The notes under the pieces were generated by a model, which worked only from the letters and a program-made list of their open reading frames with translations, was not told the DNA's origin and did no database searches. A stretch of 64,000 nt of DNA, from positions 12,700,642-12,764,641 of the forward strand of contig OZ037770.1 of NCBI GenBank assembly GCA_964035545.1, given 5' to 3'. A program made the translations under genes and the position numbers. Source of the stretch: Bugula neritina (taxonomy: Eukaryota; Animalia; Bryozoa). The number at the start of each line of letters is the position of its first letter. Position 1 is the first letter of the stretch. This document shows, in pieces, positions 13,616 to 60,956 of the stretch.

Positions 13616-13803
13616 AGGGCTATCATGCTTCTTTGTTAGATCCTTTACACTATCAATCACTTGTCATACCATGTCACTATTTGCATGTTTGAGGGTGCAA
13701 AATAATCCAGGTTAGCAGTTAACTGATAAGCAAACACTGGAATACTGTAGATTCATATCACATCATAACTGTATTGCATCTCAGTAGTTCCTACTTGCAC
13801 ACC

Positions 13804-40000: not shown

Positions 40001-43000
40001 ATGGCTGGGAGAGAAGGTTTTAAACTATTTATACTAATTAATATATTAGATTTATTCTAAGAAAACCTCCAAAGAGAACGGGCAGTTTTAAAACTGGCTT
40101 CAGTTTCTGTCAAAGCTTTTAAGTTTAACTTATTAAAAGTTAATGTTGTTACTGTTATTTATATAACTGATTTTCTTAGCCTAATTGTTCAAGTTTTATC
40201 TTTAAACTATTTTGTATTAGTCTGCTATTGCTATACTATAGCTTGTATTAAAATCATCTGGAAGATATCGGTTGCTGGGTTACTGTTCACTAGTGTATGG
40301 GTTATATGCACCGAGTAACAAATATTAGTAAATCAGATCATTCTTTACGATCAGTCGCTTATTATTGCTAAATCTATAAAAAATTTATAGCTTTTTTTGT
40401 TTTTTTAATAGATTACAGTATAATATAGCCATCAGGTAGAGTTCACCTTGTATATATAGAACATGCAATAATGTATTAAATAAAATACAGTAGAACCTGT
40501 GTTCTACAAACTATTTGAATATTGCTCTCTGCAGTGTACTCTAGTAAACTAGAAATAATAATTAACGATATTTGGTTTTAGCTCAGTTGTTTAATGCTGA
40601 ATATTTACAAAGTTTTTATCGCTGTTATTTGTATGTCTTTCTGATAGATTCCAGTATAATGTAACAGTTTGGTAAAGTTCATATTATGTGTGAAACATGT
40701 AGTGTGTTACAAAGTAGAACTTCTTTTCTGAGAACCTTTTTATTTTAGTAGACAGGAAATAATATTTCTTTATATATTATGCTGTAGATGTGTACAGACT
40801 GTGGATTGGACATAGTGGTATAGATATTCCTGAGTACTGGCTACGTGAAAGCGAAACAAAATACACTACTCAAAGTATAAAAAAGATTTCTCAGACCCAC
40901 ACTGTAACACATCTTGTTATATATGAAAAAATTCCATCACAGATCCATCTTATTTTCCCACACCTCACTCATCTCAGAATTTATGGAGTTCAACCATGTG
41001 ACCTTCAAAAGTGAGTGCATAATTCATTAGGTTATACAATTTTTCAAGTGTACTGAAATTTATGTTGGCAAAATGTAATGGCAGCGCCATTTTGTTTGTG
41101 CTGTTACTCTTGCTAATAAAGTTGTTTGTTACAGCATCAGCAAGTTGACTAATCTGAAGGTATTAGACATGGATCACAGTGACTTTTCTGCTGGTCTACC
41201 TGACATCTTCAGTTCTTTACTCTCTCTGGAAAAACTGACGTTGAACTACTGTAGCTTACGAACTCTTCCCAAGAGGTGAGCACACTTTACATTCTCTGCT
41301 ATGCTACTTATTGCACTTCCTTTCATATATCAACAAACCTAATCTCATTTCACACAACAGTTCAGCATGTCCTGTTTAGCACCTGATTTAGGCTTTTATA
41401 TAGTTTGTGAGTAGTATAGGTGTGTGTTTAATATTTCTTGTTGGTTTGCATGTAATATTCAATGTTAAATTGTTTAAAAATATTGTAATAATATAAATTT
41501 CAATGTTATTTAGCTTGTGCTAATCTAATACTCTTGCTAATAAAGTTGATTGTTACAGCATCAGCAAGTTGACTAATCTGAAGGTATTAGACATGAGTAA
41601 CAATAACTTTTCTGCTGGTCTACCTGACATCTTCAGTTCTCTACTCTCTCTGGAAGAACTGATATTGGGCTACTGTAGCTTACGAACTCTTCCCAAGAGG
41701 TGAGCACACTTTACATTCTCTGCTATGCTACTTATTGTACTTCCTTTCATATATCAGCAAACCTAATCTCATTTCACACAACAGTTCAGTATGTCCTGTT
41801 CAGCACCTGATTTAGGCTTTTATATAGTTTGTGAGTAGTATAGGTGTGTGTTTAATATTTCTTGTTGGTTTGCATGTAATACTCAATGTTATTGTTTAAA
41901 AATATTGTAATAATATAAATTTCAATGTTATTTAGCTTGTGCTAATCTAATACTCTTGCTAATAAAGTTGATTGTTACAGCATCAGCAAGTTGACTAATC
42001 TGAAGGTATTAGACATGAGTAACAATAACTTTTCTGCTGGTCTACCTGACATCTTCAGTTCTCTACTCTCTCTGGAAGAACTGATATTGGGCTACTGTAG
42101 GTTAAAGACTCTCCCCAAGAGGTGAGCACACTTTACATTCTCTGCTATGTTACTTAGCCTAGGGCCACACTGTGCGTATTTTCGCATGCGAAAATTGAAA
42201 TCACAAGTAGCAAAGGTGTCCACTGTGCGCGTTGAGAAAACATTCGCACTTGTCGCTCTGCATTTTCAACGCAAGTGCGAATCGTCTCTGTCGTCGTCAC
42301 CTAATTGGCTGGTAGTTATTCAGCGAGCCCAATTTCTTCATTTTAGTGCTACATTCCAGTAAATTGTGTTTTATTGAAAGCGAGTGCGATTTAAAAATGA
42401 AAGCTTTATTTATCACGCATCACTGACGCTACAGTGGACACCTTTGCTACTTGTGGTTTCAATTTTCGCATGCGAAAATACGCACAGTGTGGCCCTAGGC
42501 TTATTGTACTTCCTTTCATATATCAGCAAACCTAATCTCATTTCACACAACAGTTCAGTATGTCCTGTTCAGCACCTGATTTAGGCTTTAATATAGTTTG
42601 TGAGTAGTATAAGTGTGTGTTTAATATTTCTTGTTGGTTTGCATGTAATACTCAATGTTATTGTTTAAAAATATTGTAATAATATAAATTTCAATGTTAT
42701 TTAGCTTGTGCCAATCTAATACTCTTGCTAATAAAGTTGATTTTTACAGCATCAGCAAGTTGACTAATCTGAAGGTATTAGACATGGGTCACAATGACTT
42801 TTCTGCTGGTCTACCTGACATCTTCAGTTCTCTCCCCTCTCTGGAAAAATTAGAGTTGTGTGGGTGTAAATTAAAAGCTCTCCCCACAAGGTACAGCTTT
42901 ATCATAATATTCCATGCTACATTTCATATTTTTTCCTAAATCTTAGTTTCCTTATGATGTATAGCAATTTACTTTGATTTTGATTTTGAAAATACCTATA

Positions 43001-46000
43001 GATAATAGATATTATAACATACATAATGACTTTTTTTATATAATTTATTTATAAAGTTTAATTATAGCTAGTAGCTGATATTAAATTGGTCATCTTTCAC
43101 AGTGGATATGATTTATATCCCCCTGTTCACACATTACCGTTCCGTATGCCGTAATAGTAAATGTCCGCCATCTTTGGTAACATCCGGGCTGATCAAGCAG
43201 TGCTTGATTCAAAAATCACGGCTGGCTCCTATTGGGTAAAGTTGATCTGGTGCTAAAATTTTAAGAACATTTTTGCTAGTTTATTTTAATTGCTTATTGT
43301 TGATTCAATTCAGCCAATTCAAAAGTTTTATAGGATTAAAAAATCTTTATCCAGTATGTTTAAATTAAATTCAGCTTAAAAATCTAATCACAAAAGTACG
43401 CAAACTAAAAACTTAAAAATTATTTGGACAGCTAAAATATTTATTCAAATTAGTTTGCCTATTTATTTTAAGGACACATATATTTAAAAAAGAAATCAGT
43501 TCTTTTTAATTGCTTTTATTTAGTCAATAGCGTTTATATACATCTTTTGAAAATAATGGTGCGAATAATTTGTGAATAATATCCTGTCACAAATTCTGAG
43601 TGTACATATACCTATAGACTTACCGGGTTATTCCCAATGATTATACACGAATGTTCATAAATATTCTAGACTGATCGAAGAGATGGGTCATTGTTCATTG
43701 TTATTGTTTTCATTAGTCATGTTAACTACTGCCCAGCAATGTAAACAAGGTGTTGCGCAATAATTGCGAAATAACCATGGAAATTCCAATGTTTTGTTTT
43801 GTTTTGATTTTCTATAAATAGTATTGGCATGTGGGGAATGTTTTCTACTAGAATCTTCTATACTGGAATGCTTGAGAATGTTCTAGAGTTTTTTTGTTTA
43901 CTATAAATACTGAGGCAGTTGTGTTTACGAATCAGTTCATTCTCGGAGTTCATTTTTATAAATTCATCTGTGCATATCTTACTAGAAAAATAAAGTCTAC
44001 TTATATTCACAACTCTATTTACTCTCAACTGGATTAGCAAGCTGTATGCTACTTTTTTATACACTTCTGACTACCAGACTTTTCGAACTCGTCATACTGC
44101 TACCAACAGTTTTGTGACAATTGGGGCTGCTCCGGGAAGTCTCAGTCGCATACAGGGAAGTTATTAGTTACAACGTGAGCATACACAGGATTAATTAACA
44201 GTTGTTGAGACATCATGGCGTTGTTGGAGAGAGTGACACAGATGGGTAAAGATCTTGGACTGGTGGATGACAAGCTCGTAGCTTTTGTTGAAAAGAAACT
44301 ACCCATTGTTGCTGCACAAGAAGAAAAAGAAAAGGACCGAGAGGAAAAAGAAAAGGACCGAGAGGAGCGGAGATTAGAGCGTGAGGCGGAAAGGATCAGG
44401 CAAGAAAATGAGAAAGCCATAATGGAGATGAAGATAAAAGCTGACCAGGAGGCAGAAGAGAGAAGACAACAACATGAATTAGATATGGAAAAGCTGAAAG
44501 CTAACACAAGTTTGGAGCACTCAAGACATGAAAGCACCAGGTTAGAAATAGCTGACAAACCAAAACCAAAAATACCATTCTTTGATGAGAAGGTGGACGA
44601 AATGGATAGCTATTTAGAGCGGTTCGAGTGGGTTGCCGAAGGATGTAACTGGGACAAGGGAGATTGGCCCTACCATCTCAGTCAGTACCTAAGGGGTACA
44701 GCAACAGAAGCTTACATCCGGTTGTCACCTACGGATCGTAGAGATTATAAAAAAGTCAAAGAAGCCTTGTTGGAGCGCTTTAACTTGACTCAAGAGGGCT
44801 ACAGAAAAAAGCTCAGGGAGGCAGAAGCTTACGAGGATGAAACTCCTGCCCAACTATTCACTAGGATAGAAAGTTATGTGCACAAGTGGGTGGAGCTTTC
44901 AGGGGGCATGGACATAGCCAAACTAGTGGCGACTGAACAATTTATATCACCATGCCCAGACGACCTAGCTGTGCATTTAAAGCAAAGTTCCTACAACAGC
45001 AGTGAGGATATGTGTGATGCAGTGTCACTGTTCTTGCACGCCCGTGGAAGGAAACTAGCAAAGACAAAGAAAACTAATACAAAAAGGATGGAAAACACAC
45101 TTGCCGATAGCATGCATGCTGAACAAGGAAGTAAAAGCGATGGTGCATGCTTCATCTGCAAAGATAAATCACACATTGCTCGTAACTGCCCACGGCGAGG
45201 GAAGAAGTACTGTTCACATTGCATGATGAACAATCACAATACTTCAGACTGCAGAAAGTATGGTGGAAGGTCAGTGCATGCTGCTGCTGCAATAGCGACT
45301 ACTCAGAATAAGACTATGGTCACAGATCCAGGAATGTCATCTAAAGTGGAAGAACCTACTGAAATCACAGTTACCGGTAAAAAGTTTGTCAACGCTGCTG
45401 TCTGCAAGAATGGACCTAAATTCAAAGATGGGGGCACAGCAATATTTGATGCGGAAGTTAATGGCCAACGAGCTACTGTAATGCGCGACACCGGCTGTGG
45501 TTGCAATGTAGTCAATGCAAAGTATGTGCAACCTCAACACTTAACTGGAGAATCAGTTTATTTGAATATGGCTGATGCAAGTGTTAGGGAGGCTCAGTGG
45601 GCACTTATCTCAGTGCGCTCACTATTTTACAATGGTGTTGTCAAAGCTGCAGTAATGGACAAGACGATTTGTGACCTGTTTATTGGGAATGTAGATGGAG
45701 CAAGATCAGCTGACCAGCCGTTGGAAAACTGGAAGGACTGCGCCGTAACCACAAGAGCTCAAGCTGTCAAGGAAAAGTCAGGAGACAAACCACTGATAGT
45801 TGATTCAAATGCTAACCCATTAAGTATAGGGAAAGATGAGATAGCCAGACTGCAGAGGGATGACCCCACATTGGAACGTTTCTTCAATGCAAAAGAAGTG
45901 AAGAAGAAAAAGGGATGCACCACTAGGTTTGTGGTGAGGAATAAGATTCTGTACCGTGAGTACACCGACTCGAAGTCTGCCAGTGTAAAACCTGTTAAAC

Positions 46001-49000
46001 AACTCATGGTACCCAGTTCTCTGAGGAAGGAGGTTCTACAGAAAGCTCATGACTGCATAATGAGCAGACACCTAGGAGTAAAGAAAACCACTGATAGAGT
46101 GCTTTCCAACTTCTTCTGGCCAGGACTAAACGGAGATGTCGTACGTTTCTGTCAATCATGTGACATTTGCCAGAAGACGGTGAAAAAAGGCTCAGTCATG
46201 AAAGTTCCAGTACAGGAAACACCACTAATTGACACCCCATTCAAGAGATGTGCAATAGACCTAGTCGGACCAATTAACCCTCCAAGTGAGAAAGGACACC
46301 GCTACATCCTAACTTTAGTTGACTATGCTACAAGATATCCTGAAGCTACACCATTGAAGAACATTGACTCAGCTACTGTAGCTGAAGCGCTGCTTGACAT
46401 GTACAGTCGTGTTGAGATACCAGAGGAGGTGATAAGCGACCAAGGAACTCAATTCATCTCAGACTACATGAAAGAGTTTACCAGATTACTTGACATGCGA
46501 CAACTTCCTACTTCACCGTACCATGCAATGGCCAATGGACTTGTGGAAAAGTTCAACGGAACCCTCAAGAGTATGTTAAAAAAAGTTGTGTGCTAAAGAG
46601 CCAAGACAGTGGCATCGGTTCATCAATGCGGCTCTATTTGCATATAGAAAAGTCCCACAGGAATCAACAGGCTTCGCCCCATTCGAGTTACTCTATGGAA
46701 GAACTGTGCGTGGACCAATGTACATCCTGCGACAACTTTGGACAAAAGAAGACACTGCCGATGAAGTCAAGACCTGCTATCAGCATGTTTTTGAGTTGAG
46801 AGAGCGTTTGGATGACATGATGGAGATGGCACTAGCCTCGCTAAAAGACAGTCAAAAAAGATACAAACACTATTTTGACCAGAAAGCTAAGCAGAGAGAC
46901 TTCAAACCTGGTGACAAAGTGCTCATTCTTCTACCTACGGATGGAAATAAATTGTTGATGCATTGGCAAGGACCATTCAATATTGAGGAGAAAGTCAGAC
47001 TGAATGACTACATTATCAACATTAGAGGCAAGAGGAGAACATACCATGCCAACATGCTGAAGAAATATTTTGAGCGGGAGACGCCCACCAACCTTATGAC
47101 TGTTGGAGCTGTGATGACTTTAGATGCTGCTGGTACTGGAATTATTGATCACGATGAGGAAAGAGAAGAACGCTAAAATGATTTGTTCGACCTGTACGGT
47201 AAGAAACAGCAGACAGAAACAAGCAAAGATGTCTTTCTGGGTGAAAAGCTGGGGAATCAGCAAAGAAGACAGCTGGAGGAGTTACTAAGAAAGTTTGAAG
47301 GTATCTTCAGTGACTTGCCAGGAAATGCAACGGGAATAGAACATTCTATCAAGCTCACGACTGATGAGCCAGTGAAATCCAAACCATATGGATTGCCCTA
47401 CAGGGTAAGAGAGACTCTCAAGGCGGACATCGAGGACATGTTGAAGATGGGTGTTATTCGGCCGTCTACCTCTCTCTACGCTTCACCAACGGTGATAGTA
47501 AAGAAGCCAGATGGAGGCAACAGGATTTGTATAGACTATCGCAAACTAAACCGAGTCTCAGTATTCGATCCTGAACCAATGGTGAAAACAGATGACGTTT
47601 TCAGAAAGCTCAGTAAAGATAAATACTTTACCAAACTTGATTTATCCAAGGGATACTTGCAAATACCAGTGAAGAAAGAAGATATTCCTAAAACTGCATT
47701 TGTGACACCCGATGGACATTATGAATTCATCAAGATGCCATTTGGGATGGTTAACTCTGGAGCGACACTGGTGAGAGGGTTGAGAAAACTTTTTGTAAAT
47801 CTGAAAGGAGTGGACAACTACATTGATGACATTCTAGTGCACACGGAAAGTTGGGAAGAACACGTTAAAACGCTAACAGAAGTTTTCAGCCGACTTGCCA
47901 CAGCTGGACTTACCATTAAACCAAGTAAATGTAGAGTAGGAGGAACAAACGTGGAGTTCATCGGACATAAACTTTACAGGGGTGGAATTAAACCAATGGA
48001 TGACAACATTGAGAAAATTAGGGCTGCGCCAAGGCCAACCAATAAGACGCAAGTGAGATCGTTCATTGGACTTACTAGTTACTACAGAGAATATATCCCT
48101 CATTATTCAACTATAGCGAGTCCACTAACAGATTTAACAAAGAAGGGAGAACCAAAGAAAGTCAAATGGCAGGAACCACAAGAGAAGGCGTACACCAGCT
48201 TAAAAACAATGCTGACAAGTGCACCAATTTTAAAATTACCAGATGTACACAAACCGTTTGTGCTAAGGACGGATGCATCAGATGTTGGGCTAGGGGCAGT
48301 GCTGATGCAGCCTCAGGATGGAAAGCTGTTCCCTGTGAGTTACGCAAGTAGGAAATTACTAGACCGAGAAAAAAACTACTCAGCCATAGAGAAGGAATGT
48401 TTAGCTGTGGTATGGGCGGTCAAGAAATATCTACAATATTTATATGGTGTGGAGTTCGTGCTGCAGACTGATCACCAACCGCTGGTTTACATCAATTAGG
48501 CCAAATTTGAGAACAGCATAGTGATGAGATGGGCTATGTATTTACAGAACTTCAGAATCAAGGTGGAGTCAATCAAAGGAAAGGGCAATGTTGGAGCCGA
48601 TTATCTAAGCCGAATTGACTCAGAATTTTAAGTAGTAAGGAGAAATTATTAAGATAATTTCTCTTAGAATGGGGGGTTGTCACAAATTCCGAGTGTACAT
48701 ATACCTATAGACTTACCGGGTTATTCCCAATGATTATACACGAATGTTCATAAATATTCTAGACTGATCGAAGAGATGGGTCATTGTTCATTGTTATTGT
48801 TTTCATTAGTCATGTTAACTACTGCCCAGCAATGTAAACAAGGTGTTGCGCAATAATTGCGAAATAACCATGGAAATTCCAATGTTTTGTTTTGTTTTGA
48901 TTTTCTATAAATAGTATTGGCATGTGGGGAATGTTTTCTACTAGAATCTTCTATACTGGAATGCTTGAGAATGTTCTAGAGTTTTTTTTGTTTACTATAA

Positions 49001-52000
49001 ATACTGAGGCAGTTGTGTTTACGAATCAGTTCATTCTCGGTGTTCATTTTTATAAATTCATCTGTGCATATCTTACTAGAAAAATAAAGTCTACTTATAT
49101 TCACAACTCTATTTACTCTCAACTGGATTAGCAAGCTGTATGCTACTTGTCTATACACTTCTGACTACCAGACTTTTCGAACTCGTCACACTGCTACCAA
49201 CAGTTTTGTGACATATCCTAAAGCTTACAATTCACGACAGACAAGAATGACCCTTATTATGATTGGTTGAAGCTCAACATCATTCGTTGTAGTTTACGCC
49301 AGTGTGTGAACGCCTGTTGACAAAATGTAACGGCAGCGCCATTTTGTTTGTGCTGTTACTCTTGCTAATAAAGTTGATTGTTACAGCATCAGCAAGTTGA
49401 CTAATCTGAAGGTATTAGACATGGGTCACAATGACTTTTCTGCTGGTGTACCTGACATCTTCAGTTCTCTACTCTCCCTGGAAGAACTGATATTGGGCTA
49501 CTGTAGCTTACGAACTCTTCCCCTGACCCATTAATTTGATTGTTACAGCATCAGCACGTTGACTAATCTGAAGGTATTAGACATGGGTCACAATGACTTT
49601 TCTGCTGGTCTACCTGACATCTTCAGTTCTCTCCCCTCTCTGGAAAAATTAGAGTTGTGTGGGTGTAAATTAAAAGCTCTCCCCACAAGGTACAGCTTTA
49701 TCATAATATTCTATGCTACATTTCATATTTTTTCCTAAATCTTAGTTTCCTTATGATGTATAGCAATTTACTTTGATTTTGATTTTAAAAATACCCATAG
49801 ATAATAGATATCATAACATACATAATGACTTTTTTATATCAATTATTTATAAAGTTTAATTATAGCTAGTAGCTGATATTAAATTGATCATCTTTCACAG
49901 TGGATATGATTTATATCCCCTTGTTCACACATTGTCATCCCGTATGCCGTAATAGCAAATGTCCGCCATCTTTGGTAACATCCGGGCTGATCAAGCAGTG
50001 CTTGATTCAAAAAATCACAGCTGGCTCCCATTGGGTATATAGAGTTGATTTGGTACTAAAATTTTAAGAACATTTTTGCTAGTTTATTTTAATTGCTTAT
50101 TGTTGATTCAATTTAACCAATTCAAAAGTTTTATAGGATTAAAGATCTTTATCCAGTATGTTTAAATTAAATTCAGCTTAAAAATATAATCACAAAAGTA
50201 CGCAAACCAAAAACTTAAAAATTATTTGGACAGCTAAAATATTTATTCAAATCAGTTTGCCTAATTATTTTAAGGACACATAGGCTATATTTGAAAAAGA
50301 GATCGTTTCTTTTTAATTGCTTTTATTTAGTCAATAGCGTTTATATACATCTTTTGAAAATAATGTTGCGAATAGTTTGTGAATAATATCCTAAGGCGTA
50401 CAATTCACCGCAGACAAGAATTAGCCTAATTATGATTGGCCGAAGCTCAACAACATCATGTGTTGTACTTTACGCCAGTGTGTGAACGCCTGTTGACAAA
50501 ATGTAACGGCAGCGCCATTTTGTTTGTGCTGTTACTCTTGCTAATAAAGTTGATTGTTACAGCATCAGCACGTTGACTAATCTGAAGGTATTAGACATGA
50601 GTAAAATTAACTTTTCTGCTGGTCTACCTGACATCTTCAGTTCTCTACTCTCTCTGGAAAAACTGACGTTGAACTGCTGTAGGTTAAAGACTCTCCCCAA
50701 GAGGTGAGCACACTTTACATTCTCTGCTATGCTACTTATTGTTCTTCCTTTCATATATCAGCAAACCTAATCTCATTTCACACAACAGTTCAGCATGTCC
50801 TGTTTAGCACCTGATTTAGGCTGTTATATAGTGTGTGAGTAGTATAGGTGTGTGTTTAATATTTCTTGTTGGTTTGCATGTAATATTAAATGTTATTGTT
50901 TAAAAATATTGTAATAATATAAATTTCAATGTTATTTAGCTTGTGCTAATCTAATACTCTTGCTAATAAAGTTGATTGTTACAGCATCAGCAAGTTGACT
51001 AATCTGAAGGTATTAGACATGAGTAACAATAACTTTTCTGCTGGTCTACCTGACATCTTCAGTTCTCTACTCTTTCTGGAAGAACTGATATTGGGCTACT
51101 GTAGGTTACAGACTCTCCCCAAGAGGTGAGCACACTTTACATTATCTGCTATGCTACTTATTGCACTTCCTTTCATATATCACCAAACCTAATCTCATTT
51201 CACACAACAGTTCAGCATGTCCTGTTTAGCACCTGATTTAGGCTTTTATATAGTGTGTGAGTAATATAGGTGTGTGTTTAATATTTCTTGTTGGTTTGCA
51301 TGTAATATTCAATGTTATTGTTTAAAAATATTGTAATAATACAAATTTCAATGTTATTTAGCTTGTGCTTATCTAATACTCTTGTTAATAAAATTGTTTG
51401 TTACAGCATCAGCACGTTGACTAATCTGAAGATATTGGACATGAGTGAAAATAACTTTTCTGCTGGTCTACCTGACATCTTCAGTTCTCTACTCTCTCTG
51501 GAAGAACTGACGTTGAACTACTGTAGCTTACGAACTCTTCCCAAGAGGTGAGCACACTTTACATTCTCTGCTATGCTACTTATTGTACTTCCTTTCATAT
51601 ATCAGCAAACCTAATCTCATTTCACACAACAGTTCAGTATGTCCTGTTCAGCACCTGATTTAGGCTTTAATATAGTTTGTGAGTAGTATAAGTGTGTGTT
51701 TAATATTTCTTGTTGGTTTGCATGTAATATTCAATGTTATTGTTTAAAAATATTGTAATAATATAAATTTCAATGTTATTTAGCTTGTGCTAATCTAATA
51801 CTCTTGCTAATAAAGTTGATTGTTACAGCATCAGCAAGTTGACTAATCTGAAGGTATTAGACATGGGTCACAATGACTTTTCTGCTGGTCTACCTGACAT
51901 CTTCAGTTCTTTCCCCTCTCTGGAAAAATTAGACTTGTGTAGGTGTAAATTAAAAGCTCTCCCCACAAGGTACAGCTTTATCATAATATTCTATGCTACA

Positions 52001-55000
52001 TTTCATATTTTTTCCTAAATCTTAGTTTCCTTATGATGTATAGCAATTTACTTTGATTTTGATTTTGAAAATACCTATAGATAATAAATATTATAACATA
52101 CATAATGAGTTTTTTATATCAATTATTTATAAAGTTTAATTATAGCTAGTAGCTGATATTAAATTGATCATCTTTCACAGTGGATATGATTCATATCCCC
52201 CTGTTCACACATTGTCTTCCCGTATGCCGTAATAGCAAATGTCCGCCATCTTTGGTAACATCCGGGCTGATCAAGCAGTACTTGATTCGAAAAATCACAG
52301 CTGGCTCCCATTGGGTAGAGTTGATCTGGTACTAAAATTTTAAGAACATTTTTGCTAGTTTATTTTAATTGCTTATTGTTGATTCAATTTAACCGATTCA
52401 AAAGTTTTATAGGATTAAAGATCTTTATCCAGTATGTTTAAATTAAATTTAGCTTAAAAATATAATCACAAAAGTACGCAAACCAAAAACTTAAAAATTA
52501 TTTGGACAGCTAAAATATTTATTCAAATTAGTTTGCCTAATTATTTTAAGGACACATAGGCTATATTTGAAAAAGAGATCGTTTCTTTTTAATTGCTTTT
52601 ATTTAGTCAATAGCGTTTATATACATCTTTTGAAAATAATGTTGCGAATAGTTTGTGAATATTATCCTAAGGCGTACAATTCACCGCAGACAAGAATTAG
52701 CCTAATTATGATTGGTCGAAGCTCAACAACATCATGTGTTGTACTTTACGCCAGTGTGTGAACGCCTGTTGACAAAATGTGACGGCAGCGCCATTTTGTT
52801 TGTGCTGTTACTCTTGCTAATAAAGTTGATTGTTACAGCATCAGCACGTTGACTAATCTGAAGATATTGAACATGAGTGGAAATAACTTTTCTGCTGGTC
52901 TACCTGACATCTTCAGTTCTTTACTCTCTCTGGAAGAATTGCATTTGAGAAGTTGTAGCTTACGGACTCTCCCCAAGAGGTGAAATACTTTTTATATTTT
53001 GCGCTATGCTACTTATTGCACTTCGTTTCATATATCACCAAACCTAATCTCATTTCACACAACAGTTCAGTATGTCCTTTTTAGCACCTGATTTAGGCTT
53101 TTATATAGTTTGTGAGTAGTATAAGTGTGTGTTTAATATTTCTTGTTGGTTTGCATGTAATATTCAATGTTAAATTGTTTAAAAATATTGTAATAATATA
53201 AATTTCAATGTTTTTTAGCTTGTGCTAATCTAATACTCTTGCTAATAAAATTGTTTGTTACAGCATCAGCAAGTTGACTAATCTGAAGATATTGAACATG
53301 AGTGAAAATAACTTTTCTGCTGGTCTACCTGACATCTTCAGTTCTCTACTCTTTCTGGAAGAACTGATGTTGAACTACTGTAGGTTAAAGACTCTCCCCA
53401 AGAGGTGAGCACACTTTACATTCTCTGCTATGCTACTTATTGTACTTCCTTTCATATATCAGCAAACCTAATCTCATTTCACACAACAGTTCAGCATATG
53501 TCCTGTTTAGCACCTGATTTAGGCTTTTATATAGTTTGTGAGTAGTATAAGTGTGTGTTTAATATTTCTTGTTGGTTTGCATGTAATATTCAATGTTATT
53601 GTTTAAAAATATTGTAATAATATAAATTTCAATGTTATTTAGCTTGTGCTAATCTAATACTCTTGCTAATAAAGTTGATTGTTACAGCATCAGCACGTTG
53701 ACTAATCTGAAGATATTGAACATGAGTGAAAATAACTTTTCTGCTGGTCTACCTGACATCTTCAGTTCTCTACTCTTTCTGGAAGAACTGATATTGGGCT
53801 ACTGTAGGTTACAGACTCTCCCCAAGAGGTGAGCACACTTTACATTCTCTGCTATGCTGCTTATTGTACTTCCTTTCATATATCAGCAAACCTAATCTCA
53901 TTTCACACAACAGTTCAGTATGTCCTGTTCAGCACCTGATTTAGGCTTTTATATAGTTTGTGAGTAGTATAAGTGTGTGTTTAATATTTCTTGTTGGTTT
54001 GCATGTAATATTCAATGTTGTTGTTTAAAAATATTGTAATAATATAAATTTCAATGTTATTTAGCTTGTGCTAATCTAATACTCTTGCTAATAAAGTTGA
54101 TTTTTACAGCATCAGCACGTTGACTAATCTGAAGGTATTAGACATGAGTAAAAATAACTTTTCTGCTGGTCTACCTGACATCTTCAGTTCTCTACTCTCT
54201 CTGGAAAAACTGATATTGGGCTACTGTAGGTTACAGACTCTCCCCAAGAGGTGAGCACACTTTACATTCTCTGCTATGCTACTTATTGTACTTCCTTTCA
54301 TATATCAGCAAACCTAATCTCATTTCACACAACAGTTCAGTATGTCCTTTTTAGCACCTGATTTAGGCTTTTATATAGTTTGTGAGTAGTATAGGTGTGT
54401 GTTTAATATTTCTTGTTGGTTTGCATGTAATATTCAATGTTATTGTTTAAAAATATTGTAATAATATAAATTTCAATGTTATTTAGCTTGTGCTAATCTA
54501 ATACTCTTGCTAATAAAATTGTTTGTTACAGCATTTGTAATTTGACTAATCTGAAGGTATTAGACTTGAGGCACAATGACTTTTCTGCTGGTCTACCTGA
54601 CATCTTCAGTTCTTTACTCTCTCTGGAAAAATTAGAGTTGTGTTGGTGTAAATTAAAAGCTGTCCCCACAAGTTACAGCTTTATCATAATATTCTATGCT
54701 ACATTTCATATTTTTTCCTAAATCTTAGTTTCTTTATGATGTATAGCAATTTACTTTGATTTTGAACTTAAAAATACCTATAGATAATAGATATTATAAC
54801 ATACATAATGACTTTTTTATATCAATTATTTATAAAGTTTAATTATAGCTAGTAGCTGATATTAAATTGATCATCTTTCACAGTGGATATGATTTATATC
54901 CCCCTGTTCACACATTGTCTTCCCGTATGCCGTAATAGCAAATGTCCGCCATCTTTGGTAACATCCGGGCTGATCAAGCAGTGCTTGATTCAAAAAATCA

Positions 55001-58000
55001 CAGCTGGCTCCCATTGGGTAGAGTTGATCTGGTACTAAAATTTTAAGAATATTTTTGCTAGTTTATTTTAATTGCTTATTGTGCATTCAATTTAACTAAT
55101 TCAAAAGTTTTATGGGATTAAAAATTTTTTATCCAGTATGTTTAAATTAAATTCAGCTTAAAAATCTAATCACAAAAGTACGCAAACCAAAAACTTAAAA
55201 ATTTCTTGGACAACTAAAATACTTATTCAAATTAGTTTGCCTAATTATTTTAAGAACACATATATTTAAAAAAGAGATCAGTTCTTTTTAATTGCTTTTA
55301 TTTAGTCAATAGCATTTATATACATCTTTTGAAAATAATGTTGCGAATAATTTGTAAATAATATCCTAAGGCAGACAGACAAGAATTAGCCTTATTATGA
55401 TTGGTCAAAGTTCAACATCATGTGTTGTACTTTACGCCAGTGTGTGAATGCCTGTTGGCAAAATGTAACGGCAGCGCCATTTTGTTTGTGCTGTTACTCT
55501 TGCTAATAAAGTTGATTGTTACAGCATCAGCACGTTGACTAATCTGAAGGTATTAGACATGAGTAAAATTAACTTTTCTGCTGGTCTACCTGACATCTTC
55601 AGTTCTCTACTCTCTCTGGAAAAACTGACGTTGAACTGCTGTAGGTTAAAGACTCTCCCCAAGAGGTGAGCACACTTTACATTCTCTGCTATGCTACTTA
55701 TTGTTCTTCCTTTCATATATCAGCAAACCTAATCTCATTTCACACAACAGTTCAGCATGTCCTGTTTAGCACCTGATTTAGGCTGTTATATAGTGTGTGA
55801 GTAGTATAGGTGTGTGTTTAATATTTCTTGTTGGTTTGCATGTAATATTAAATGTTATTGTTTAAAAATATTGTAATAATATAAATTTCAATGTTATTTA
55901 GCTTGTGCTAATCTAATACTCTTGCTAATAAAGTTGATTGTTACAGCATCAGCAAGTTGACTAATCTGAAGGTATTAGACATGAGTAACAATAACTTTTC
56001 TGCTGGTCTACCTGACATCTTCAGTTCTCTACTCTTTCTGGAAGAACTGATATTGGGCTACTGTAGGTTACAGACTCTCCCCAAGAGGTGAGCACACTTT
56101 ACATTATCTGCTATGCTACTTATTGCACTTCCTTTCATATATCACCAAACCTAATCTCATTTCACACAACAGTTCAGCATGTCCTGTTTAGCACCTGATT
56201 TAGGCTTTTATATAGTGTGTGAGTAATATAGGTGTGTGTTTAATATTTCTTGTTGGTTTGCATGTAATATTCAATGTTATTGTTTAAAAATATTGTAATA
56301 ATACAAATTTCAATGTTATTTAGCTTGTGCTTATCTAATACTCTTGTTAATAAAATTGTTTGTTACAGCATCAGCACGTTGACTAATCTGAAGATATTGG
56401 ACATGAGTGAAAATAACTTTTCTGCTGGTCTACCTGACATCTTCAGTTCTCTACTCTCTCTGGAAGAACTGACGTTGAACTACTGTAGCTTACGAACTCT
56501 TCCCAAGAGGTGAGCACACTTTACATTCTCTGCTATGCTACTTATTGTACTTCCTTTCATATATCAGCAAACCTAATCTCATTTCACACAACAGTTCAGT
56601 ATGTCCTGTTCAGCACCTGATTTAGGCTTTAATATAGTTTGTGAGTAGTATAAGTGTGTGTTTAATATTTCTTGTTGGTTTGCATGTAATATTCAATGTT
56701 ATTGTTTAAAAATATTGTAATAATATAAATTTCAATGTTATTTAGCTTGTGCTAATCTAATACTCTTGCTAATAAAGTTGATTGTTACAGCATCAGCAAG
56801 TTGACTAATCTGAAGGTATTAGACATGGGTCACAATGACTTTTCTGCTGGTCTACCTGACATCTTCAGTTCTTTCCCCTCTCTGGAAAAATTAGACTTGT
56901 GTAGGTGTAAATTAAAAGCTCTCCCCACAAGGTACAGCTTTATCATAATATTCTATGCTACATTTCATATTTTTTCCTAAATCTTAGTTTCCTTATGATG
57001 TATAGCAATTTACTTTGATTTTGATTTTGAAAATACCTATAGATAATAAATATTATAACATACATAATGAGTTTTTTATATCAATTATTTATAAAGTTTA
57101 ATTATAGCTAGTAGCTGATATTAAATTGATCATCTTTCACAGTGGATATGATTCATATCCCCCTGTTCACACATTGTCTTCCCGTATGCCGTAATAGCAA
57201 ATGTCCGCCATCTTTGGTAACATCCGGGCTGATCAAGCAGTACTTGATTCGAAAAATCACAGCTGGCTCCCATTGGGTAGAGTTGATCTGGTACTAAAAT
57301 TTTAAGAACATTTTTGCTAGTTTATTTTAATTGCTTATTGTTGATTCAATTTAACCGATTCAAAAGTTTTATAGGATTAAAGATCTTTATCCAGTATGTT
57401 TAAATTAAATTTAGCTTAAAAATATAATCACAAAAGTACGCAAACCAAAAACTTAAAAATTATTTGGACAGCTAAAATATTTATTCAAATTAGTTTGCCT
57501 AATTATTTTAAGGACACATAGGCTATATTTGAAAAAGAGATCGTTTCTTTTTAATTGCTTTTATTTAGTCAATAGCGTTTATATACATCTTTTGAAAATA
57601 ATGTTGCGAATAGTTTGTGAATATTATCCTAAGGCGTACAATTCACCGCAGACAAGAATTAGCCTAATTATGATTGGTCGAAGCTCAACAACATCATGTG
57701 TTGTACTTTACGCCAGTGTGTGAACGCCTGTTGACAAAATGTGACGGCAGCGCCATTTTGTTTGTGCTGTTACTCTTGCTAATAAAGTTGATTGTTACAG
57801 CATCAGCACGTTGACTAATCTGAAGATATTGAACATGAGTGGAAATAACTTTTCTGCTGGTCTACCTGACATCTTCAGTTCTTTACTCTCTCTGGAAGAA
57901 TTGCATTTGAGAAGTTGTAGCTTACGGACTCTCCCCAAGAGGTGAAATACTTTTTATATTTTGCGCTATGCTACTTATTGCACTTCGTTTCATATATCAC

Positions 58001-60956
58001 CAAACCTAATCTCATTTCACACAACAGTTCAGTATGTCCTTTTTAGCACCTGATTTAGGCTTTTATATAGTTTGTGAGTAGTATAAGTGTGTGTTTAATA
58101 TTTCTTGTTGGTTTGCATGTAATATTCAATGTTAAATTGTTTAAAAATATTGTAATAATATAAATTTCAATGTTTTTTAGCTTGTGCTAATCTAATACTC
58201 TTGCTAATAAAATTGTTTGTTACAGCATCAGCAAGTTGACTAATCTGAAGATATTGAACATGAGTGAAAATAACTTTTCTGCTGGTCTACCTGACATCTT
58301 CAGTTCTCTACTCTTTCTGGAAGAACTGATGTTGAACTACTGTAGGTTAAAGACTCTCCCCAAGAGGTGAGCACACTTTACATTCTCTGCTATGCTACTT
58401 ATTGTACTTCCTTTCATATATCAGCAAACCTAATCTCATTTCACACAACAGTTCAGCATATGTCCTGTTTAGCACCTGATTTAGGCTTTTATATAGTTTG
58501 TGAGTAGTATAAGTGTGTGTTTAATATTTCTTGTTGGTTTGCATGTAATATTCAATGTTATTGTTTAAAAATATTGTAATAATATAAATTTCAATGTTAT
58601 TTAGCTTGTGCTAATCTAATACTCTTGCTAATAAAGTTGATTGTTACAGCATCAGCACGTTGACTAATCTGAAGATATTGAACATGAGTGAAAATAACTT
58701 TTCTGCTGGTCTACCTGACATCTTCAGTTCTCTACTCTTTCTGGAAGAACTGATATTGGGCTACTGTAGGTTACAGACTCTCCCCAAGAGGTGAGCACAC
58801 TTTACATTCTCTGCTATGCTACTTATTGTACTTCCTTTCATATATCAGCAAACCTAATCTCATTTCACACAACAGTTCAGTATGTCCTGTTCAGCACCTG
58901 ATTTAGGCTTTTATATAGTTTGTGAGTAGTATAAGTGTGTGTTTAATATTTCTTGTTGGTTTGCATGTAATATTCAATGTTGTTGTTTAAAAATATTGTA
59001 ATAATATAAATTTCAATGTTATTTAGCTTGTGCTAATCTAATACTCTTGCTAATAAAGTTGATTTTTACAGCATCAGCACGTTGACTAATCTGAAGGTAT
59101 TAGACATGAGTAAAAATAACTTTTCTGCTGGTCTACCTGACATCTTCAGTTCTCTACTCTCTCTGGAAAAACTGATATTGGGCTACTGTAGGTTACAGAC
59201 TCTCCCCAAGAGGTGAGCACACTTTACATTCTCTGCTATGCTACTTATTGTACTTCCTTTCATATATCAGCAAACCTAATCTCATTTCACACAACAGTTC
59301 AGTATGTCCTTTTTAGCACCTGATTTAGGCTTTTATATAGTTTGTGAGTAGTATAGGTGTGTGTTTAATATTTCTTGTTGGTTTGCATGTAATATTCAAT
59401 GTTATTGTTTAAAAATATTGTAATAATATAAATTTCAATGTTATTTAGCTTGTGCTAATCTAATACTCTTGCTAATAAAATTGTTTGTTACAGCATTTGT
59501 AATTTGACTAATCTGAAGGTATTAGACTTGAGGCACAATGACTTTTCTGCTGGTCTACCTGACATCTTCAGTTCTTTACTCTCTCTGGAAAAATTAGAGT
59601 TGTGTTGGTGTAAATTAAAAGCTGTCCCCACAAGTTACAGCTTTATCATAATATTCTATGCTACATTTCATATTTTTTCCTAAATCTTAGTTTCTTTATG
59701 ATGTATAGCAATTTACTTTGATTTTGAACTTAAAAATACCTATAGATAATAGATATTATAACATACATAATGACTTTTTTATATCAATTATTTATAAAGT
59801 TTAATTATAGCTAGTAGCTGATATTAAATTGATCATCTTTCACAGTGGATATGATTTATATCCCCCTGTTCACACATTGTCTTCCCGTATGCCGTAATAG
59901 CAAATGTCCGCCATCTTTGGTAACATCCGGGCTGATCAAGCAGTGCTTGATTCAAAAAATCACAGCTGGCTCCCATTGGGTAGAGTTGATCTGGTACTAA
60001 AATTTTAAGAATATTTTTGCTAGTTTATTTTAATTGCTTATTGTGCATTCAATTTAACTAATTCAAAAGTTTTATGGGATTAAAAATTTTTTATCCAGTA
60101 TGTTTAAATTAAATTCAGCTTAAAAATCTAATCACAAAAGTACGCAAACCAAAAACTTAAAAATTTCTTGGACAACTAAAATACTTATTCAAATTAGTTT
60201 GCCTAATTATTTTAAGAACACATATATTTAAAAAAGAGATCAGTTCTTTTTAATTGCTTTTATTTAGTCAATAGCATTTATATACATCTTTTGAAAATAA
60301 TGTTGCGAATAATTTGTAAATAATATCCTAAGGCAGACAGACAAGAATTAGCCTTATTATGATTGGTCAAAGTTCAACATCATGTGTTGTACTTTACGCC
60401 AGTGTGTGAATGCCTGTTGGCAAAATGTAACGGCAGCGCCATTTTGTTTGTGCTGTTACTCTTGCTAATAAAGTTGATTGTTACAGCATCAGCAAGTTGA
60501 CTAATCTGAAGGTATTAGACATGGGTCACAATGACTTTTCTGCTGGTGTACCTGACATCTTCAGTTCTGTACTTTCTCTGGAAGAACTGATATTGGGCTA
60601 CTGTAGCTTACGAACTCTTCCCAAGAGGTGAGCACACTTTACATTCTCTGCTATGCTACTTATTGTACTTCCTTTCATATATCAACAAACCTAATCTCAT
60701 TTCACACAACATTTCAGTATGTCCTGTTTATAAACGTAATATAAGCGTTAATGTTTCTGTTGATCGTTTCTTTATGCTAATCTAATGCCCTGACCCATTA
60801 ATTTGATTGTTACAGCATCAGCAAGTTGACTAATCTGAAGGTATTGGACATGGGTGGAAATCACTTTTCTGCTGGTCTACCTGACATCTTCAGTTCTCTC
60901 CCCTCTCTGGAAGAATTGAATTTGAGAAGTTGTAGTTTACGGACTCTCCCCAAGAG
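40001..60956 (+). CDS. Leucine-rich-repeat protein gene, 5' part, with a tandem array of 26 two-LRR cassette exons; probably intracellular (ROCO/MFHAS1-like or NLR-like); 3' exons not found in window
   Basis: Putative start exon 40001-40016 (CAACATGG context, MAGRE, phase 1, weak donor) and cap exon 40788-41010 (ends phase 2, GTGAGT donor). The 141-nt phase 2-2 exons start at 41135, 41559, 41981, 42750, 49387*, 49549, 50563, 50985, 51407, 51829, 52839, 53264, 53688, 54110, 54532*, 55525, 55947, 56369, 56791, 57801, 58226, 58650, 59072, 59494*, 60487 and 60816 (* = dead donor). Consensus is SISKLTNLKVLDMSxNxFSAGLPDIFSSLLSLEELxLxxCxLxTLPK. No signal peptide is seen. Confidence 0.85.
42157..42500. 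mobile_element. PIF/Harbinger-like MITE inserted in an LRR-array intron
   Basis: About 70-bp TIRs beginning GCCTAGGGCCACACTGTGCGTATTTTCGCATGCGAAAATTGAAA, with a TTA TSD (42154-42156 and 42501-42503). Sister introns show the empty site CTACTTATTG. Confidence 0.9.
43585..49213 (+). mobile_element. Full-length Ty3/Gypsy LTR retrotransposon, Gmr1-like domain order (gag-PR-IN-RT-RH), inactivated
   Basis: LTRs at 43585-44119 and 48678-49213 (TGTCAC...GTGACA; I count about 5 substitutions and 1 indel). 5-bp TSD TATCC, tRNA-Pro-like PBS (TGGGGCTGCTCCGGGA) just after 44119 and PPT AGAATGGGGGG before 48678. Confidence 0.95.
44215..48631 (+). pseudogene. Gypsy gag-pol polyprotein, disrupted
   Basis: CCHC knuckles (CFICKDKSHIARNC, CSHCMMNNHNTSDC), protease (MRDTGC), integrase (H..H..C..C zinc finger, AIDLVGP, SDQGTQF, NGLVEKFNGTLK, GPF), RT (CIDYRKLN, YIDDILV) and RNase H (LRTDASDVGLGAVL, TDHQPL). 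There is a frameshift in an A-run near 46580-46590 and in-frame stops at 47174-47176 and 48497-48499. The natural stop ends at 48631. Confidence 0.92.
50500..60490. repeat. Near-perfect 4,962-bp tandem duplication of nine LRR cassettes
   Basis: Identical ORFs are offset by 4,962 (50557/55519, 51312/56274, 52567/57529). I noticed only one difference by eye (53859 G versus 58821 A). Confidence 0.93.

What the first reader, a model, noticed from the sequence alone, without database searches (positions are those of the whole stretch)
41135..60956. Variation is concentrated on the LRR concave-face residues while the exon core and introns are near-invariant
The four residues after L(D/N)(M/L) vary as DHSD, SNNN, GHND, SKIN, SENN, SGNN, SKNN, RHND and GGNH. 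The second repeat varies as KLTLNYCSLR, ELILGYCSLR, ELILGYCRLK, KLELCGCKLK, KLTLNCCRLK, ELILGYCRLQ, ELTLNYCSLR, KLDLCRCKLK, ELHLRSCSLR, ELMLNYCRLK, KLILGYCRLQ, KLELCWCKLK and ELNLRSCSLR. These are the x positions of LxxLxLxxN/CxL, the known ligand-binding beta-sheet face. FSAGLPDIFSS and TNLK are almost invariant even at synonymous sites, and the ~282-nt introns differ by only a few bases. Codons diverging faster than the flanking introns points to diversifying selection on binding specificity.
Basis: partly seen in the sequence, partly recalled or inferred. Interest (0 to 1): 0.85.

Follow-up and report, generated by a model that had tools for sequence, protein, structure and literature searches.

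The report
Hypervariable LRR exon array, bryozoan receptor
A moss-animal (bryozoan) gene carries 26 nearly identical tandem exons, each coding two leucine-rich repeats, that differ almost only at the residues lining the predicted binding face; this is how a fast-adapting immune or self/non-self receptor would look, though it is a design already seen in brown algae and fungi.

Summary
Window 41135-60956 (+) holds 26 copies (17 distinct) of a 141-nt phase-1 exon coding two LRRs. All nine and thirteen variant strings exist.

In ten matched units, intron diversity is 0.034, and exon sites outside the x positions match it at 0.031-0.046. The a-priori xxLxLxx codons reach 0.224 (Fisher p = 6e-8).

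A model of a Watersipora relative puts x3, x5 and x7 inside the beta strands.

- Pairwise pN/pS at the variable codons is about 1.
- A tree-free count gives omega 3.6 (p about 0.02-0.09) in this array and 1.65 (p = 0.026) pooled over five arrays.
- Synonymous sites in the patches are not low, so retention of old variants against homogenisation fits as well as new positive selection.

The array is the probable N-terminal arm of an LRR-Roc-COR-caspase gene, from a family of at least 64 in a genome fitting Bugula neritina.

Nine exons are copies from a 4,962-bp duplication with one mismatch. Three exons are splice-defective.

No RNA data were available.

The scan found this family before on other DNA of this genome. 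The closest known systems are brown-algal LRR-ROCO exon shuffling and fungal high-internal-conservation NLR repeats.

The parts
40001..40016 (+). Putative first coding exon (ATG GCT GGG AGA GAA G, then gt)
   Evidence: The ATG and its context are conserved upstream of all three chromosome-4 paralogues. The exon end is inferred; there is no RNA evidence.
40858..41010 (+). 3' part of the exon before the array (..IPSQIHLIFPHLTHLRIYGVQPCDLQ), donor gtgagt at 41011; acceptor not determined
   Evidence: It is 71-75% identical to the equivalent exon of the three C4 paralogues. It ends with two bases (AA), so the phase fits the first array exon.
41135..41275 (+). LRR exon 1 (DMDHSD / KLTLNYCSLR), block 1
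41559..41699 (+). LRR exon 2 (DMSNNN / ELILGYCSLR)
41981..42121 (+). LRR exon 3 (DMSNNN / ELILGYCRLK)
42157..42503 (.). 347-nt MITE-like insertion with terminal inverted repeats, in the intron after exon 3
   Evidence: Once it is removed, the intron is 281 nt like the others.
42750..42890 (+). LRR exon 4, block-terminal 'T' type (DMGHND / KLELCGCKLK..ALPT), donor GTACAGCT
43585..49213 (+). LTR retrotransposon inserted in the T-type intron (LTRs at 43585-44119 and 48678-49213)
   Evidence: The LTR pair is 100%/98% identical. Pfam finds integrase, RT and RNase H. The host intron resumes at 49214.
49387..49527 (+). LRR exon 5, defective: its 3' end and donor are deleted and it is fused to the last 21 nt of an intron; read-through meets TAA
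49549..49689 (+). LRR exon 6, T type
50563..50703 (+). LRR exon 7 (DMSKIN / KLTLNCCRLK); first base of the first copy of the 4,962-bp duplication (50563-55524)
50985..51125 (+). LRR exon 8
51407..51547 (+). LRR exon 9
51829..51969 (+). LRR exon 10, T type (KLDLCRCKLK), followed by an 869-nt intron
52839..52979 (+). LRR exon 11 (NMSGNN / ELHLRSCSLR). Its intron is a mosaic: the first ~30 nt resemble the last exon's intron and the rest is the standard type
53264..53404 (+). LRR exon 12
53688..53828 (+). LRR exon 13
54110..54250 (+). LRR exon 14
54532..54672 (+). LRR exon 15, T type with the donor GT changed to TT (probably skipped or frame-breaking)
55525..60486 (+). Second copy of the 4,962-bp tandem duplication, carrying exons 16-24 (starts 55525, 55947, 56369, 56791, 57801, 58226, 58650, 59072, 59494). 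These are identical to exons 7-15. Exon 24 has the same TT donor defect.
   Evidence: The two copies differ at 1 base in 4,962. Contig depth in run X1 is about 198-234 inside the duplication and 81-87 in unique flanks, which is compatible with two copies.
60487..60627 (+). LRR exon 25 (DMGHND / ELILGYCSLR), followed by a 188-nt intron
60816..60956 (+). LRR exon 26 (DMGGNH / ELNLRSCSLR), donor GTAAAACA as in the C4 paralogues. It would splice about 3.7 kb downstream to the LRR-Roc-COR exon at L004:625, beyond the window end.
   Evidence: The phase fits (AG + T = Ser). The splice itself was not observed.

Best explanation
The stretch is the germline LRR arm of one large gene. A short N-terminal part (inferred exons near 40001 and 40858-41010) is followed by 26 tandem 141-nt exons. 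Each exon is symmetric (phase 1 at both ends) and codes a 24-residue plus a 23-residue leucine-rich repeat. Next comes a 2.1-kb exon 3.7 kb further on that codes four more LRRs, a Roc GTPase and a COR-like region, and then caspase exons.

The array grew and is kept uniform by unequal crossing-over and gene conversion at several scales: 422-nt units, 2-2.7-kb blocks that end in a distinct 'T' exon with an 870-nt intron, and a 4,962-bp two-block duplication.

This homogenisation has made the introns and the structural parts of the exons about 97-100% alike. The solvent-facing x positions of the two beta strands and the loop after them stay different from unit to unit, and they are shuffled into mosaics.

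The most likely cause is selection on the ligand-binding surface. Either it favours new residues, or, as I lean, it removes conversion events that erase differences between repeats.

Shown here: the anatomy, the diversity contrast, the mosaicism, the family context and the same pattern in four other arrays.

Inferred: that the exons are spliced in series to the Roc exon, that the protein is made, that the variable residues contact a ligand, and that the gene acts in immunity or self/non-self recognition with the caspase as the output.
For: Anatomy:
- 26 in-phase exons with canonical splice sites.
- The downstream Roc exon has a matching acceptor and phase.
- Pfam LRR_1 scores 31.2 bits (cut-off 20.6) and Roc 29.9 bits (cut-off 27).
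- PDB sequence hits are to C. tepidum Roco and LRRK1.

Paralogues and relatives:
- Three chromosome-4 paralogues share the two upstream exons, 5-6 such LRR exons and a Roc exon, but their introns are not alignable.
- Watersipora subatra RefSeq models join such 47-aa units in series to Roc-COR. The gene there has the same 141-nt phase-1 exons and a caspase gene next to it.

Diversity in this array:
- Intron pi is 0.034.
- Non-x exon sites are at 0.031-0.046.
- x codons are at 0.22-0.28, with p = 6e-8 to 1e-11.
- Non-x codons have omega about 0.5, which indicates purifying selection and a working gene.
- x-codon omega is 3.6 here and 1.65 pooled (p = 0.026).

Same positions variable elsewhere:
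- The C4 genes and 20 exons of C1/C3/C5 paralogues.
- Watersipora, with x codons at 0.367 against introns at 0.161.
- An unrelated intronless gene on an ENA contig, with pN(x) 0.217 against background pS 0.046.

Recombination and structure:
- A minimum of 10 recombination events in 141 nt, and a mosaic intron after exon 52839.
- x3-x7 lie in the beta strands of the P0042 model.

Family size: at least 64 intact Roc-COR exons in the genome.
Against: - No RNA run holds the stretch. The only run found is DNA contigs, so expression, exon inclusion and the join to the Roc exon are unproven.
- Three exons cannot be spliced normally (49387, 54532, 59494), and the array carries a very young LTR element and a MITE. 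The gene could be decaying.
- Pairwise pN/pS at the variable codons is about 1. The event-based omega depends on which codons are counted and rests on 1.5-4.5 synonymous events.
- No codon model or recombination-aware test was run.
- COR-A is below the Pfam cut-off (17.1 against 35.3 bits).
- The structural mapping uses a relative, not this protein.
Confidence: 0.72

Rival explanations
1. There is no selection for diversity. The x positions are simply unconstrained (omega about 1). Their excess over the introns is a by-product of how conversion tracts fall, or of a recent amplification from a few old, already different exons. The array may be part of a decaying gene.
For: - Nei-Gojobori pN/pS is 0.91-1.17 at the variable codons.
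- The event-based omega of 1.43 is not significant.
- Synonymous variants in the patches are not lower than in introns.
- Three exons are splice-defective and two transposon insertions are present.
- No RNA evidence exists.
Against: - Unconstrained sites should be homogenised together with the introns that surround them. Instead they are 6.5-8 times more diverse, and the 33-nt core between the two patches is identical in 24 of 26 copies.
- Non-x codons show omega about 0.5, and the Roc-COR exon is an intact 695-codon frame.
- The same positions stand out in four independent arrays.
Confidence: 0.13
2. The exons are a menu rather than a fixed series. Every exon is symmetric (phase 1-1), so alternative or stochastic exon skipping could produce many receptor isoforms from one gene. 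On this reading, the variable positions serve isoform diversity. This can hold together with the main explanation.
For: - All 26 exons keep the frame when any subset is skipped.
- Three defective exons must be skipped for a full-length product.
- Brown-algal LRR-ROCO genes with one LRR per exon show alternative splicing of tandem LRR exons (PMC11378527).
Against: - There are no RNA data for this gene.
- Watersipora RefSeq models join consecutive units in genomic order.
- Splice sites are uniformly strong, and I looked for no selector or docking elements.
Confidence: 0.25
3. Part of the array is an assembly artefact. The 4,962-bp duplicate, and perhaps other near-identical units, would be mis-assembled repeats, so copy number and some mosaics are not real.
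For: The two copies differ at 1 base in 4,962. Tandem repeats are a known source of assembly error.
Against: - Contig depth in an independent-format DNA run is about 198-234 for pieces inside the duplication and 81-87 for unique flanks, as two copies would give.
- That run may come from the same specimen, and the tool warns that depth is not a copy number.
- The 17 distinct exons and their variable positions do not depend on the duplication.
Confidence: 0.06
4. The cassettes are rearranged somatically, as in the lamprey VLR system or as proposed for brown algae.
For: The only support is the resemblance of a cassette array with hypervariable concave-face residues, and the speculation in PMC3341825.
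Against: - Every cassette has its own canonical acceptor and donor, lies in transcriptional order on one strand, and forms an ordinary multi-exon gene.
- No incomplete germline gene, flanking donor cassettes or other sign of such a mechanism was seen.
Confidence: 0.02

Closest known systems
Brown-algal LRR-ROCO genes with exon-per-repeat shuffling (Ectocarpus; Zambounis et al. 2012, PMC3341825; Teng et al. 2024, PMC11378527)
   Same: - LRR-Roc-COR order.
- LRR modules sit in short symmetric exons.
- The number of LRR exons varies between paralogues, and inactivated LRR exons occur inside the array.
- There is recombination within the LRR domain.
- Selected or variable sites are x3, x5, x7 and x8 of LxxLxLxxN on the concave face.
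   Different: - Here there are two LRRs per 141-nt exon, not one per 72 nt.
- No exons lie on the opposite strand.
- Introns are homogenised to about 97%.
- The host is an animal, and a caspase follows COR.
- dN/dS above 1 is only marginal here, and alternative splicing is untested.
Fungal NLR repeats with high internal conservation (het-d/het-e HNWD family of Podospora; Paoletti et al. 2007, PMC1805685)
   Same: - Near-identical tandem repeats undergo concerted evolution.
- A few positions per repeat are hypervariable and lie on the interaction surface.
- Repeats are reshuffled.
- The family is large and linked to a cell-death output.
   Different: - The repeats there are WD40, in one exon, behind a NACHT/NB-ARC switch.
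- Here they are LRRs, in separate exons, in front of a Roc-COR switch.
- Positive selection there was shown with codon models; here it is marginal.
- Repeat-number polymorphism between individuals was not tested here.
Plant R-gene and receptor LRR domains (hypervariable solvent-exposed xxLxLxx residues)
   Same: Variation is concentrated on the x residues of the beta strand, and sequence exchange between repeats or paralogues occurs (established knowledge; papers listed).
   Different: Plant LRR domains are mostly coded in one or a few exons and are not arrays of near-identical exon-intron units. Their switch is NB-ARC or a kinase.
SHOC2 and the Chlorobium tepidum Roco LRR domain (solved structures)
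   Same: These are the best structural matches of the modelled relative's LRR arm. SHOC2 (7tvf, 9btp) gives TM 0.65-0.70 at 30% identity. The CtRoco LRR (5il7) gives TM 0.62-0.67.
   Different: They are single-copy, conserved scaffolds of about 20 repeats without hypervariable positions. This array could code up to 46-52 repeats.

Membership tests
Leucine-rich repeat (typical 23-24-residue type) | LxxLxLxx(N/C)xL conserved segment repeated with a 23-24-residue period | tested here: met
   Each exon plus its junction codon gives LxxLxxLxLxxNxFxxxLPxxIxx followed by LxxLxxLxLxxCxLxxLPxxIxx. Pfam LRR_1 scores 31.2 bits against a cut-off of 20.6.
Leucine-rich repeat (typical 23-24-residue type) | Curved solenoid whose parallel beta sheet lines the concave face | tested here: inconclusive
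This is shown only for the closest spliced relative, P0042:1-480: pLDDT 81, strands on x3-L-x5-L-x7, Foldseek matches to SHOC2 and CtRoco LRR.
Roco proteins (LRR-Roc-COR) | Roc GTPase domain following the LRRs in the same gene | tested here: met
   L004:626-2710 has Pfam Roc at 29.9 bits (cut-off 27) and the P-loop GNTMAGKTS. PDB hits are CtRoco and LRRK1. The exon's acceptor and phase fit the array, but the physical join in mRNA was not observed.
Roco proteins (LRR-Roc-COR) | COR domain directly after Roc | tested here: inconclusive
   Pfam COR-A scores 17.1 bits against a cut-off of 35.3. More distant homologues of the same exon carry PF16095 in precomputed annotation.
Brown-algal type exon-shuffled LRR-ROCO receptors | Each LRR module in its own frame-neutral exon, with variable exon number and dead exons in the array | tested here: met
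   The exons are 141 nt and phase 1-1. There are 26 here against 3-6 in paralogues, and three are splice-defective. The module is two LRRs rather than one, and there are no antisense copies.
Brown-algal type exon-shuffled LRR-ROCO receptors | Positive selection (omega above 1) at concave-face x positions | tested here: inconclusive
   Results are 0.91-1.17 pairwise, 1.43 (not significant), 3.6 (p 0.02-0.09), and 1.65 pooled (p = 0.026). No codon model was run.
Brown-algal type exon-shuffled LRR-ROCO receptors | Alternative splicing of the tandem LRR exons | not testable with these tools
   No RNA run holds the stretch.
High-internal-conservation repeat receptors (fungal HNWD/NLR style) | Nucleotide-level homogeneity of repeats, with hypervariable positions on the binding surface | tested here: met
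   Intron pi is 0.034, the core is identical in 24/26 copies, and x codons are at 0.22-0.28.
High-internal-conservation repeat receptors (fungal HNWD/NLR style) | NACHT or NB-ARC nucleotide switch | tested here: not met
   The switch here is Roc. The gene works like these receptors but is not a member.
High-internal-conservation repeat receptors (fungal HNWD/NLR style) | Repeat-number and sequence polymorphism between individuals | not testable with these tools
   Only one assembly and one DNA run were available. Two metagenome scans found nothing.
Lamprey VLR-type somatic cassette assembly | Incomplete germline gene flanked by donor cassettes that lack splice sites | tested here: not met
   All cassettes are ordinary exons with an acceptor and a donor, in order on one strand.

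The most novel reading that the evidence does not exclude
This array may be the recognition module of a single-chain sensor-switch-executioner (LRR, Roc-COR, caspase). A colonial animal would use it for self/non-self or pathogen recognition. It would be an animal counterpart of fungal het NLRs. New specificities would be made in the germline by continual unit shuffling, possibly multiplied by skipping of the frame-neutral exons. On this reading the 26-exon locus is a hot spot that differs in copy number and residues between colonies.
Probability: 0.2. Interest if true: 0.85.

Novelty: new variant of a known kind. Interest (0 to 1): 0.58.

Why it matters
If the selection reading holds, bryozoans have arrived at a known way of making receptor diversity. 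Brown algae do the same with LRR-ROCO exons, and fungi do it with WD40, ANK or TPR repeats. In each case many near-identical repeat units are homogenised by recombination, except at the few residues that touch the ligand.

Here the output domain would be a caspase in the same chain, which would link recognition directly to cell death.

The locus is compact, has an internal neutral standard (its introns), and sits in a family of at least 64 genes. That makes the question of how invertebrates without antibodies diversify recognition testable with long-read cDNA and population sequencing in a common fouling animal.

Tried and rejected
- RNA evidence: the run search found no RNA holder. The one run (X1) is made of short DNA contigs. 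Its apparent 'joints' are contigs of paralogous exons, not splices.
- Two metagenome scans found nothing. One used the exact 33-nt core and the other a looser two-anchor pattern.
- JGI contigs with Roc exons about 80% identical in nucleotides (L020, L021) carry no LRR exon in the 0.6-1.2 kb upstream, so they gave no orthologous array.
- Tree-based dN/dS was rejected. At least 10 recombination events in 141 nt make any single tree invalid. I used pairwise and per-codon tree-free counts instead, which are crude.
- Templating of the variable patches from the chromosome-4 paralogues was considered. The patch strings are not shared between the loci.
- The idea that the core's silent-site invariance within this array needs a special cause was rejected, because it matches intron-level homogeneity. 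The inter-locus silent conservation remains unexplained.
Exons were searched singly or as an alignment of single exons (A1), and natural relatives were used for structure.
Full report
**What is there**

All copies are on the + strand, where chance predicts none. Each core lies 49 nt inside a 141-nt unit preceded by TTACAG. The unit is followed in most copies by GTGAGCAC or GTACAGCT.

The first base of each unit completes a codon begun by the last two bases of the previous unit. Every unit is therefore a symmetric phase-1 exon of 47 codons. Its product reads LxxLxxLxLxxNxFxxxLPxxIxx followed by LxxLxxLxLxxCxLxxLPxxIxx, which is two leucine-rich repeats. Pfam LRR_1 scores 31.2 bits against a cut-off of 20.6.

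There are 17 distinct exon sequences. The other nine belong to a 4,962-bp tandem duplication (50563-55524 and 55525-60486) that differs at a single base.

**Higher-order anatomy**

The array is built of blocks. Each block has one to four 'internal' exons with 281-284-nt introns. In six of the seven blocks a distinct 'T' exon then follows (KL(E/D)LCxCKLK..(A/V)PT, donor GTACAGCT) with an 850-870-nt intron; the last block (exons 25-26) ends without one.

- One T intron carries an LTR retrotransposon whose two LTRs are 100% and 98% identical. It has integrase, RT and RNase H frames. I only describe this element.
- One internal intron carries a 347-nt MITE-like insertion.
- Three exons cannot be spliced normally. 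Exon 49387 has lost its 3' end and donor and would read into TAA. Exons 54532 and 59494 have GT changed to TT at the donor.
- Because all exons are frame-neutral, skipping these three would still leave an open frame of 23 exons, or 46 repeats.

**The gene**

- Downstream. The window is G000:C6:12700642-12764641. At 625 nt beyond its end, an acceptor (tgtttacag) opens a 2.1-kb exon in the same phase. It codes four more LRRs, a Roc GTPase (P-loop GNTMAGKTS; Pfam Roc 29.9 bits, cut-off 27) and a COR-like region that falls below the Pfam cut-off. Caspase-like exons follow. Its best solved relatives by sequence are C. tepidum Roco and LRRK1.
- Upstream. Two short segments (39886-40012 with a conserved ATG at 40001, and 40858-41010) are shared with three paralogous genes on chromosome 4. 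Each of those genes has 5-6 such 141-nt exons and a Roc exon 70-73% identical in protein. Their introns are 443-1754 nt long and do not align with those here.
- Family and species. The genome holds at least 64 intact Roc-COR exons among 141 candidates. Its size (216.0 Mb) and its nine large sequences fit the published Bugula neritina assembly (PMC11480708).
- Earlier scan notes. They had already described the 3' part of this gene, and this family elsewhere in the genome.
- Expression. No RNA run holds the stretch and the only run found is DNA. Splicing and expression are therefore inferred, not shown.
- Spliced relative. In the bryozoan Watersipora subatra, RefSeq protein models join homologous 47-residue units in series to Roc-COR. 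The gene there has the same 141-nt phase-1 exons with 84-85-nt introns, and a caspase gene lies next to it.

**Testing the observation**

In the ten units with standard introns:

| Site class | pi | Segregating sites |
|---|---|---|
| Introns | 0.034 | 33 of 281 |
| Exon, outside the ten most variable codons | 0.031 | 8 of 111 |
| The ten most variable codons | 0.28 | 21 of 30 (Fisher p = 1e-11) |

To avoid choosing sites after seeing the data, I repeated the test with the classical xxLxLxx positions of both repeats (codons 8, 9, 11, 13, 14, 32, 33, 35, 37, 38).

- Their pi is 0.224, with 17 of 30 sites segregating (Fisher p = 6e-8 against introns).
- Only 10 of 20,000 random ten-codon sets are as diverse.

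So the exon scaffold is as uniform as the introns, and the x positions are 6.5-8 times more diverse. That part of the finding is solid.

Within this array it is what intron-level homogeneity predicts. Against the chromosome-4 genes, however, the core's silent divergence is 0.03, where other non-x codons show 0.385. That points to a nucleotide-level constraint or to inter-locus conversion, and I could not explain it.

**Where the variable residues sit**

By motif they are x7, x8 and x10 of the first repeat (with minor variation at x3 and x5). In the second repeat they are x3, x5, x7, x8, x10 and x12.

Instead I folded residues 1-480 of the closest natural spliced relative, Watersipora P0042 (pLDDT 81, pTM 0.80).

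- In every unit of that model the strands cover x3-L-x5-L-x7.
- The model superposes on SHOC2 and on the C. tepidum Roco LRR domain.
- In such solenoids the strands line the concave face; this is established knowledge.

The mapping is therefore supported by homology, not shown directly for this protein.

**Is it diversifying selection?**

| Test | Result |
|---|---|
| Nei-Gojobori pN/pS, variable codons | 0.91 (17 exons), 1.17 (10 units) |
| Nei-Gojobori pN/pS, other codons | about 0.4 |
| Per-codon event count, reader-type set | omega 1.43, not significant |
| Per-codon event count, a-priori set | omega 3.6 (27.5 non-synonymous, 1.5 synonymous events; p 0.02-0.09 by rounding) |
| Event count pooled over five arrays (x codons / other codons) | omega 1.65 (p = 0.026) / 0.55 (p = 6e-5 for below 1) |

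The per-codon count ignores trees. A tree-free method was needed because at least 10 recombination events are required within 141 nt. The five pooled arrays are this one, the chromosome-4 genes, 20 exons of chromosome 1/3/5 paralogues, Watersipora and an intronless gene on an ENA contig.

Using neutral sites outside the patches as the standard gives a clearer picture.

- Here, x-codon diversity is 6.5-8 times that of the introns.
- In Watersipora it is 2.3 times (0.367 against 0.161).
- In the ENA gene, pN at x positions is 4.7 times the background pS.

Silent variants inside the variable patches, however, are not lower than in introns: 5 on 19 silent sites against 33 on 281. Four leucine codons next to the patches carry intermediate-frequency silent variants. 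The intron after exon 52839 is a mosaic whose first 30 nt belong to another unit type.

Together this fits an array in which conversion and unequal crossing-over homogenise everything that selection does not protect. On this reading the patches are older variants kept and reshuffled. Fresh positive selection after each duplication fits at least as poorly or as well, and I cannot separate the two. Both are selection for diversity at the binding face. Pure neutrality is unlikely, because unconstrained sites would be homogenised with their surroundings.

**Comparison with what is known**

- Brown-algal LRR-ROCO family (closest system). Each LRR is a 72-nt exon, the exons are shuffled within and between genes, dead exons lie in the introns, and codon models place positive selection on x3, x5, x7 and x8 of the concave face. 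Alternative splicing of the tandem exons has been reported (PMC3341825; PMC11378527).
- Fungal NLRs with repeats of high internal conservation (closest mechanistic parallel). WD40 repeats evolve in concert, with four hypervariable surface positions per repeat (PMC1805685).
- This locus differs in four ways. It has a two-repeat exon module, homogenised introns that give an internal neutral standard, an animal host, and a caspase behind the Roc-COR switch.

It is therefore a new variant of a known kind, not a new principle. The scan had already met the family on other DNA of this genome.

**Verdict**

Interest is moderate to high for comparative immunology, and lower for novelty of principle.

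Noticed in passing
window 4664-6052 (-), 13774-15162 (+), 17425-18798 (-): Three paralogous intronless frames of 457-462 codons. They have a weak Sulfotransfer_3 match (E 0.0036, below cut-off) and a P-loop-like GRCGSTA motif. This looks like a small local gene family of unknown role.
   Followed up: partly
window 43585-49213: A very young LTR retrotransposon (LTRs 100%/98% identical) with open integrase and RT-RNase H frames lies inside an intron of the array. The integrase frame lies upstream of the RT frame. Described only.
   Followed up: partly
window 42157-42503: A 347-nt MITE-like element with terminal inverted repeats (GCCTAGGGCCACACTG... / ...CAGTGTGGCCCTAGGC) and an apparent TTA target duplication.
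   Followed up: no
exon codons 4-8 and 17-27 (e.g. window 50994-51008 and 51033-51065) versus G000:C4:21.09-21.22 Mb: Silent-site divergence between this array and the chromosome-4 paralogues is 0.03 in the LTNLK and FSAGLPDIFSS codons, against 0.385 in other non-x codons. This suggests a nucleotide-level constraint (splicing enhancer or small-RNA target) or conversion between chromosomes. It remains unexplained.
   Followed up: partly
window 63400-64000: A dispersed repeat with at least 45 copies at 72-82% identity across the genome.
   Followed up: no
L022:10001-13816 (ENA contig ERZ18545485 atg000496l): An intronless 1,271-codon LRR-Roc-COR gene of an unidentified eukaryote. It has 13 near-identical 48-residue double-LRR units that vary at the same x positions. 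Death-domain and kinase frames lie a few kb upstream.
   Followed up: partly
L023 (Watersipora subatra OY755161.1, 14858969-14879064): The same 141-nt phase-1 double-LRR exons with 84-85-nt introns are followed by Roc-COR and by an adjacent Peptidase_C14 gene model. The LRR-Roc-COR-caspase arrangement is therefore shared by two cheilostome bryozoans.
   Followed up: partly
G000:C1:33.8-35.1 Mb and C6:2.6-6.3 Mb: Dense clusters of intact Roc-COR exons (at least 64 scored in the genome). Sampled members have 2-5 double-LRR exons with a near-identical backbone (LKNLEVLNIS.NNLSEGLPDNIFTSLLSLREL.M..C.LSTLP) and the same variable positions.
   Followed up: partly
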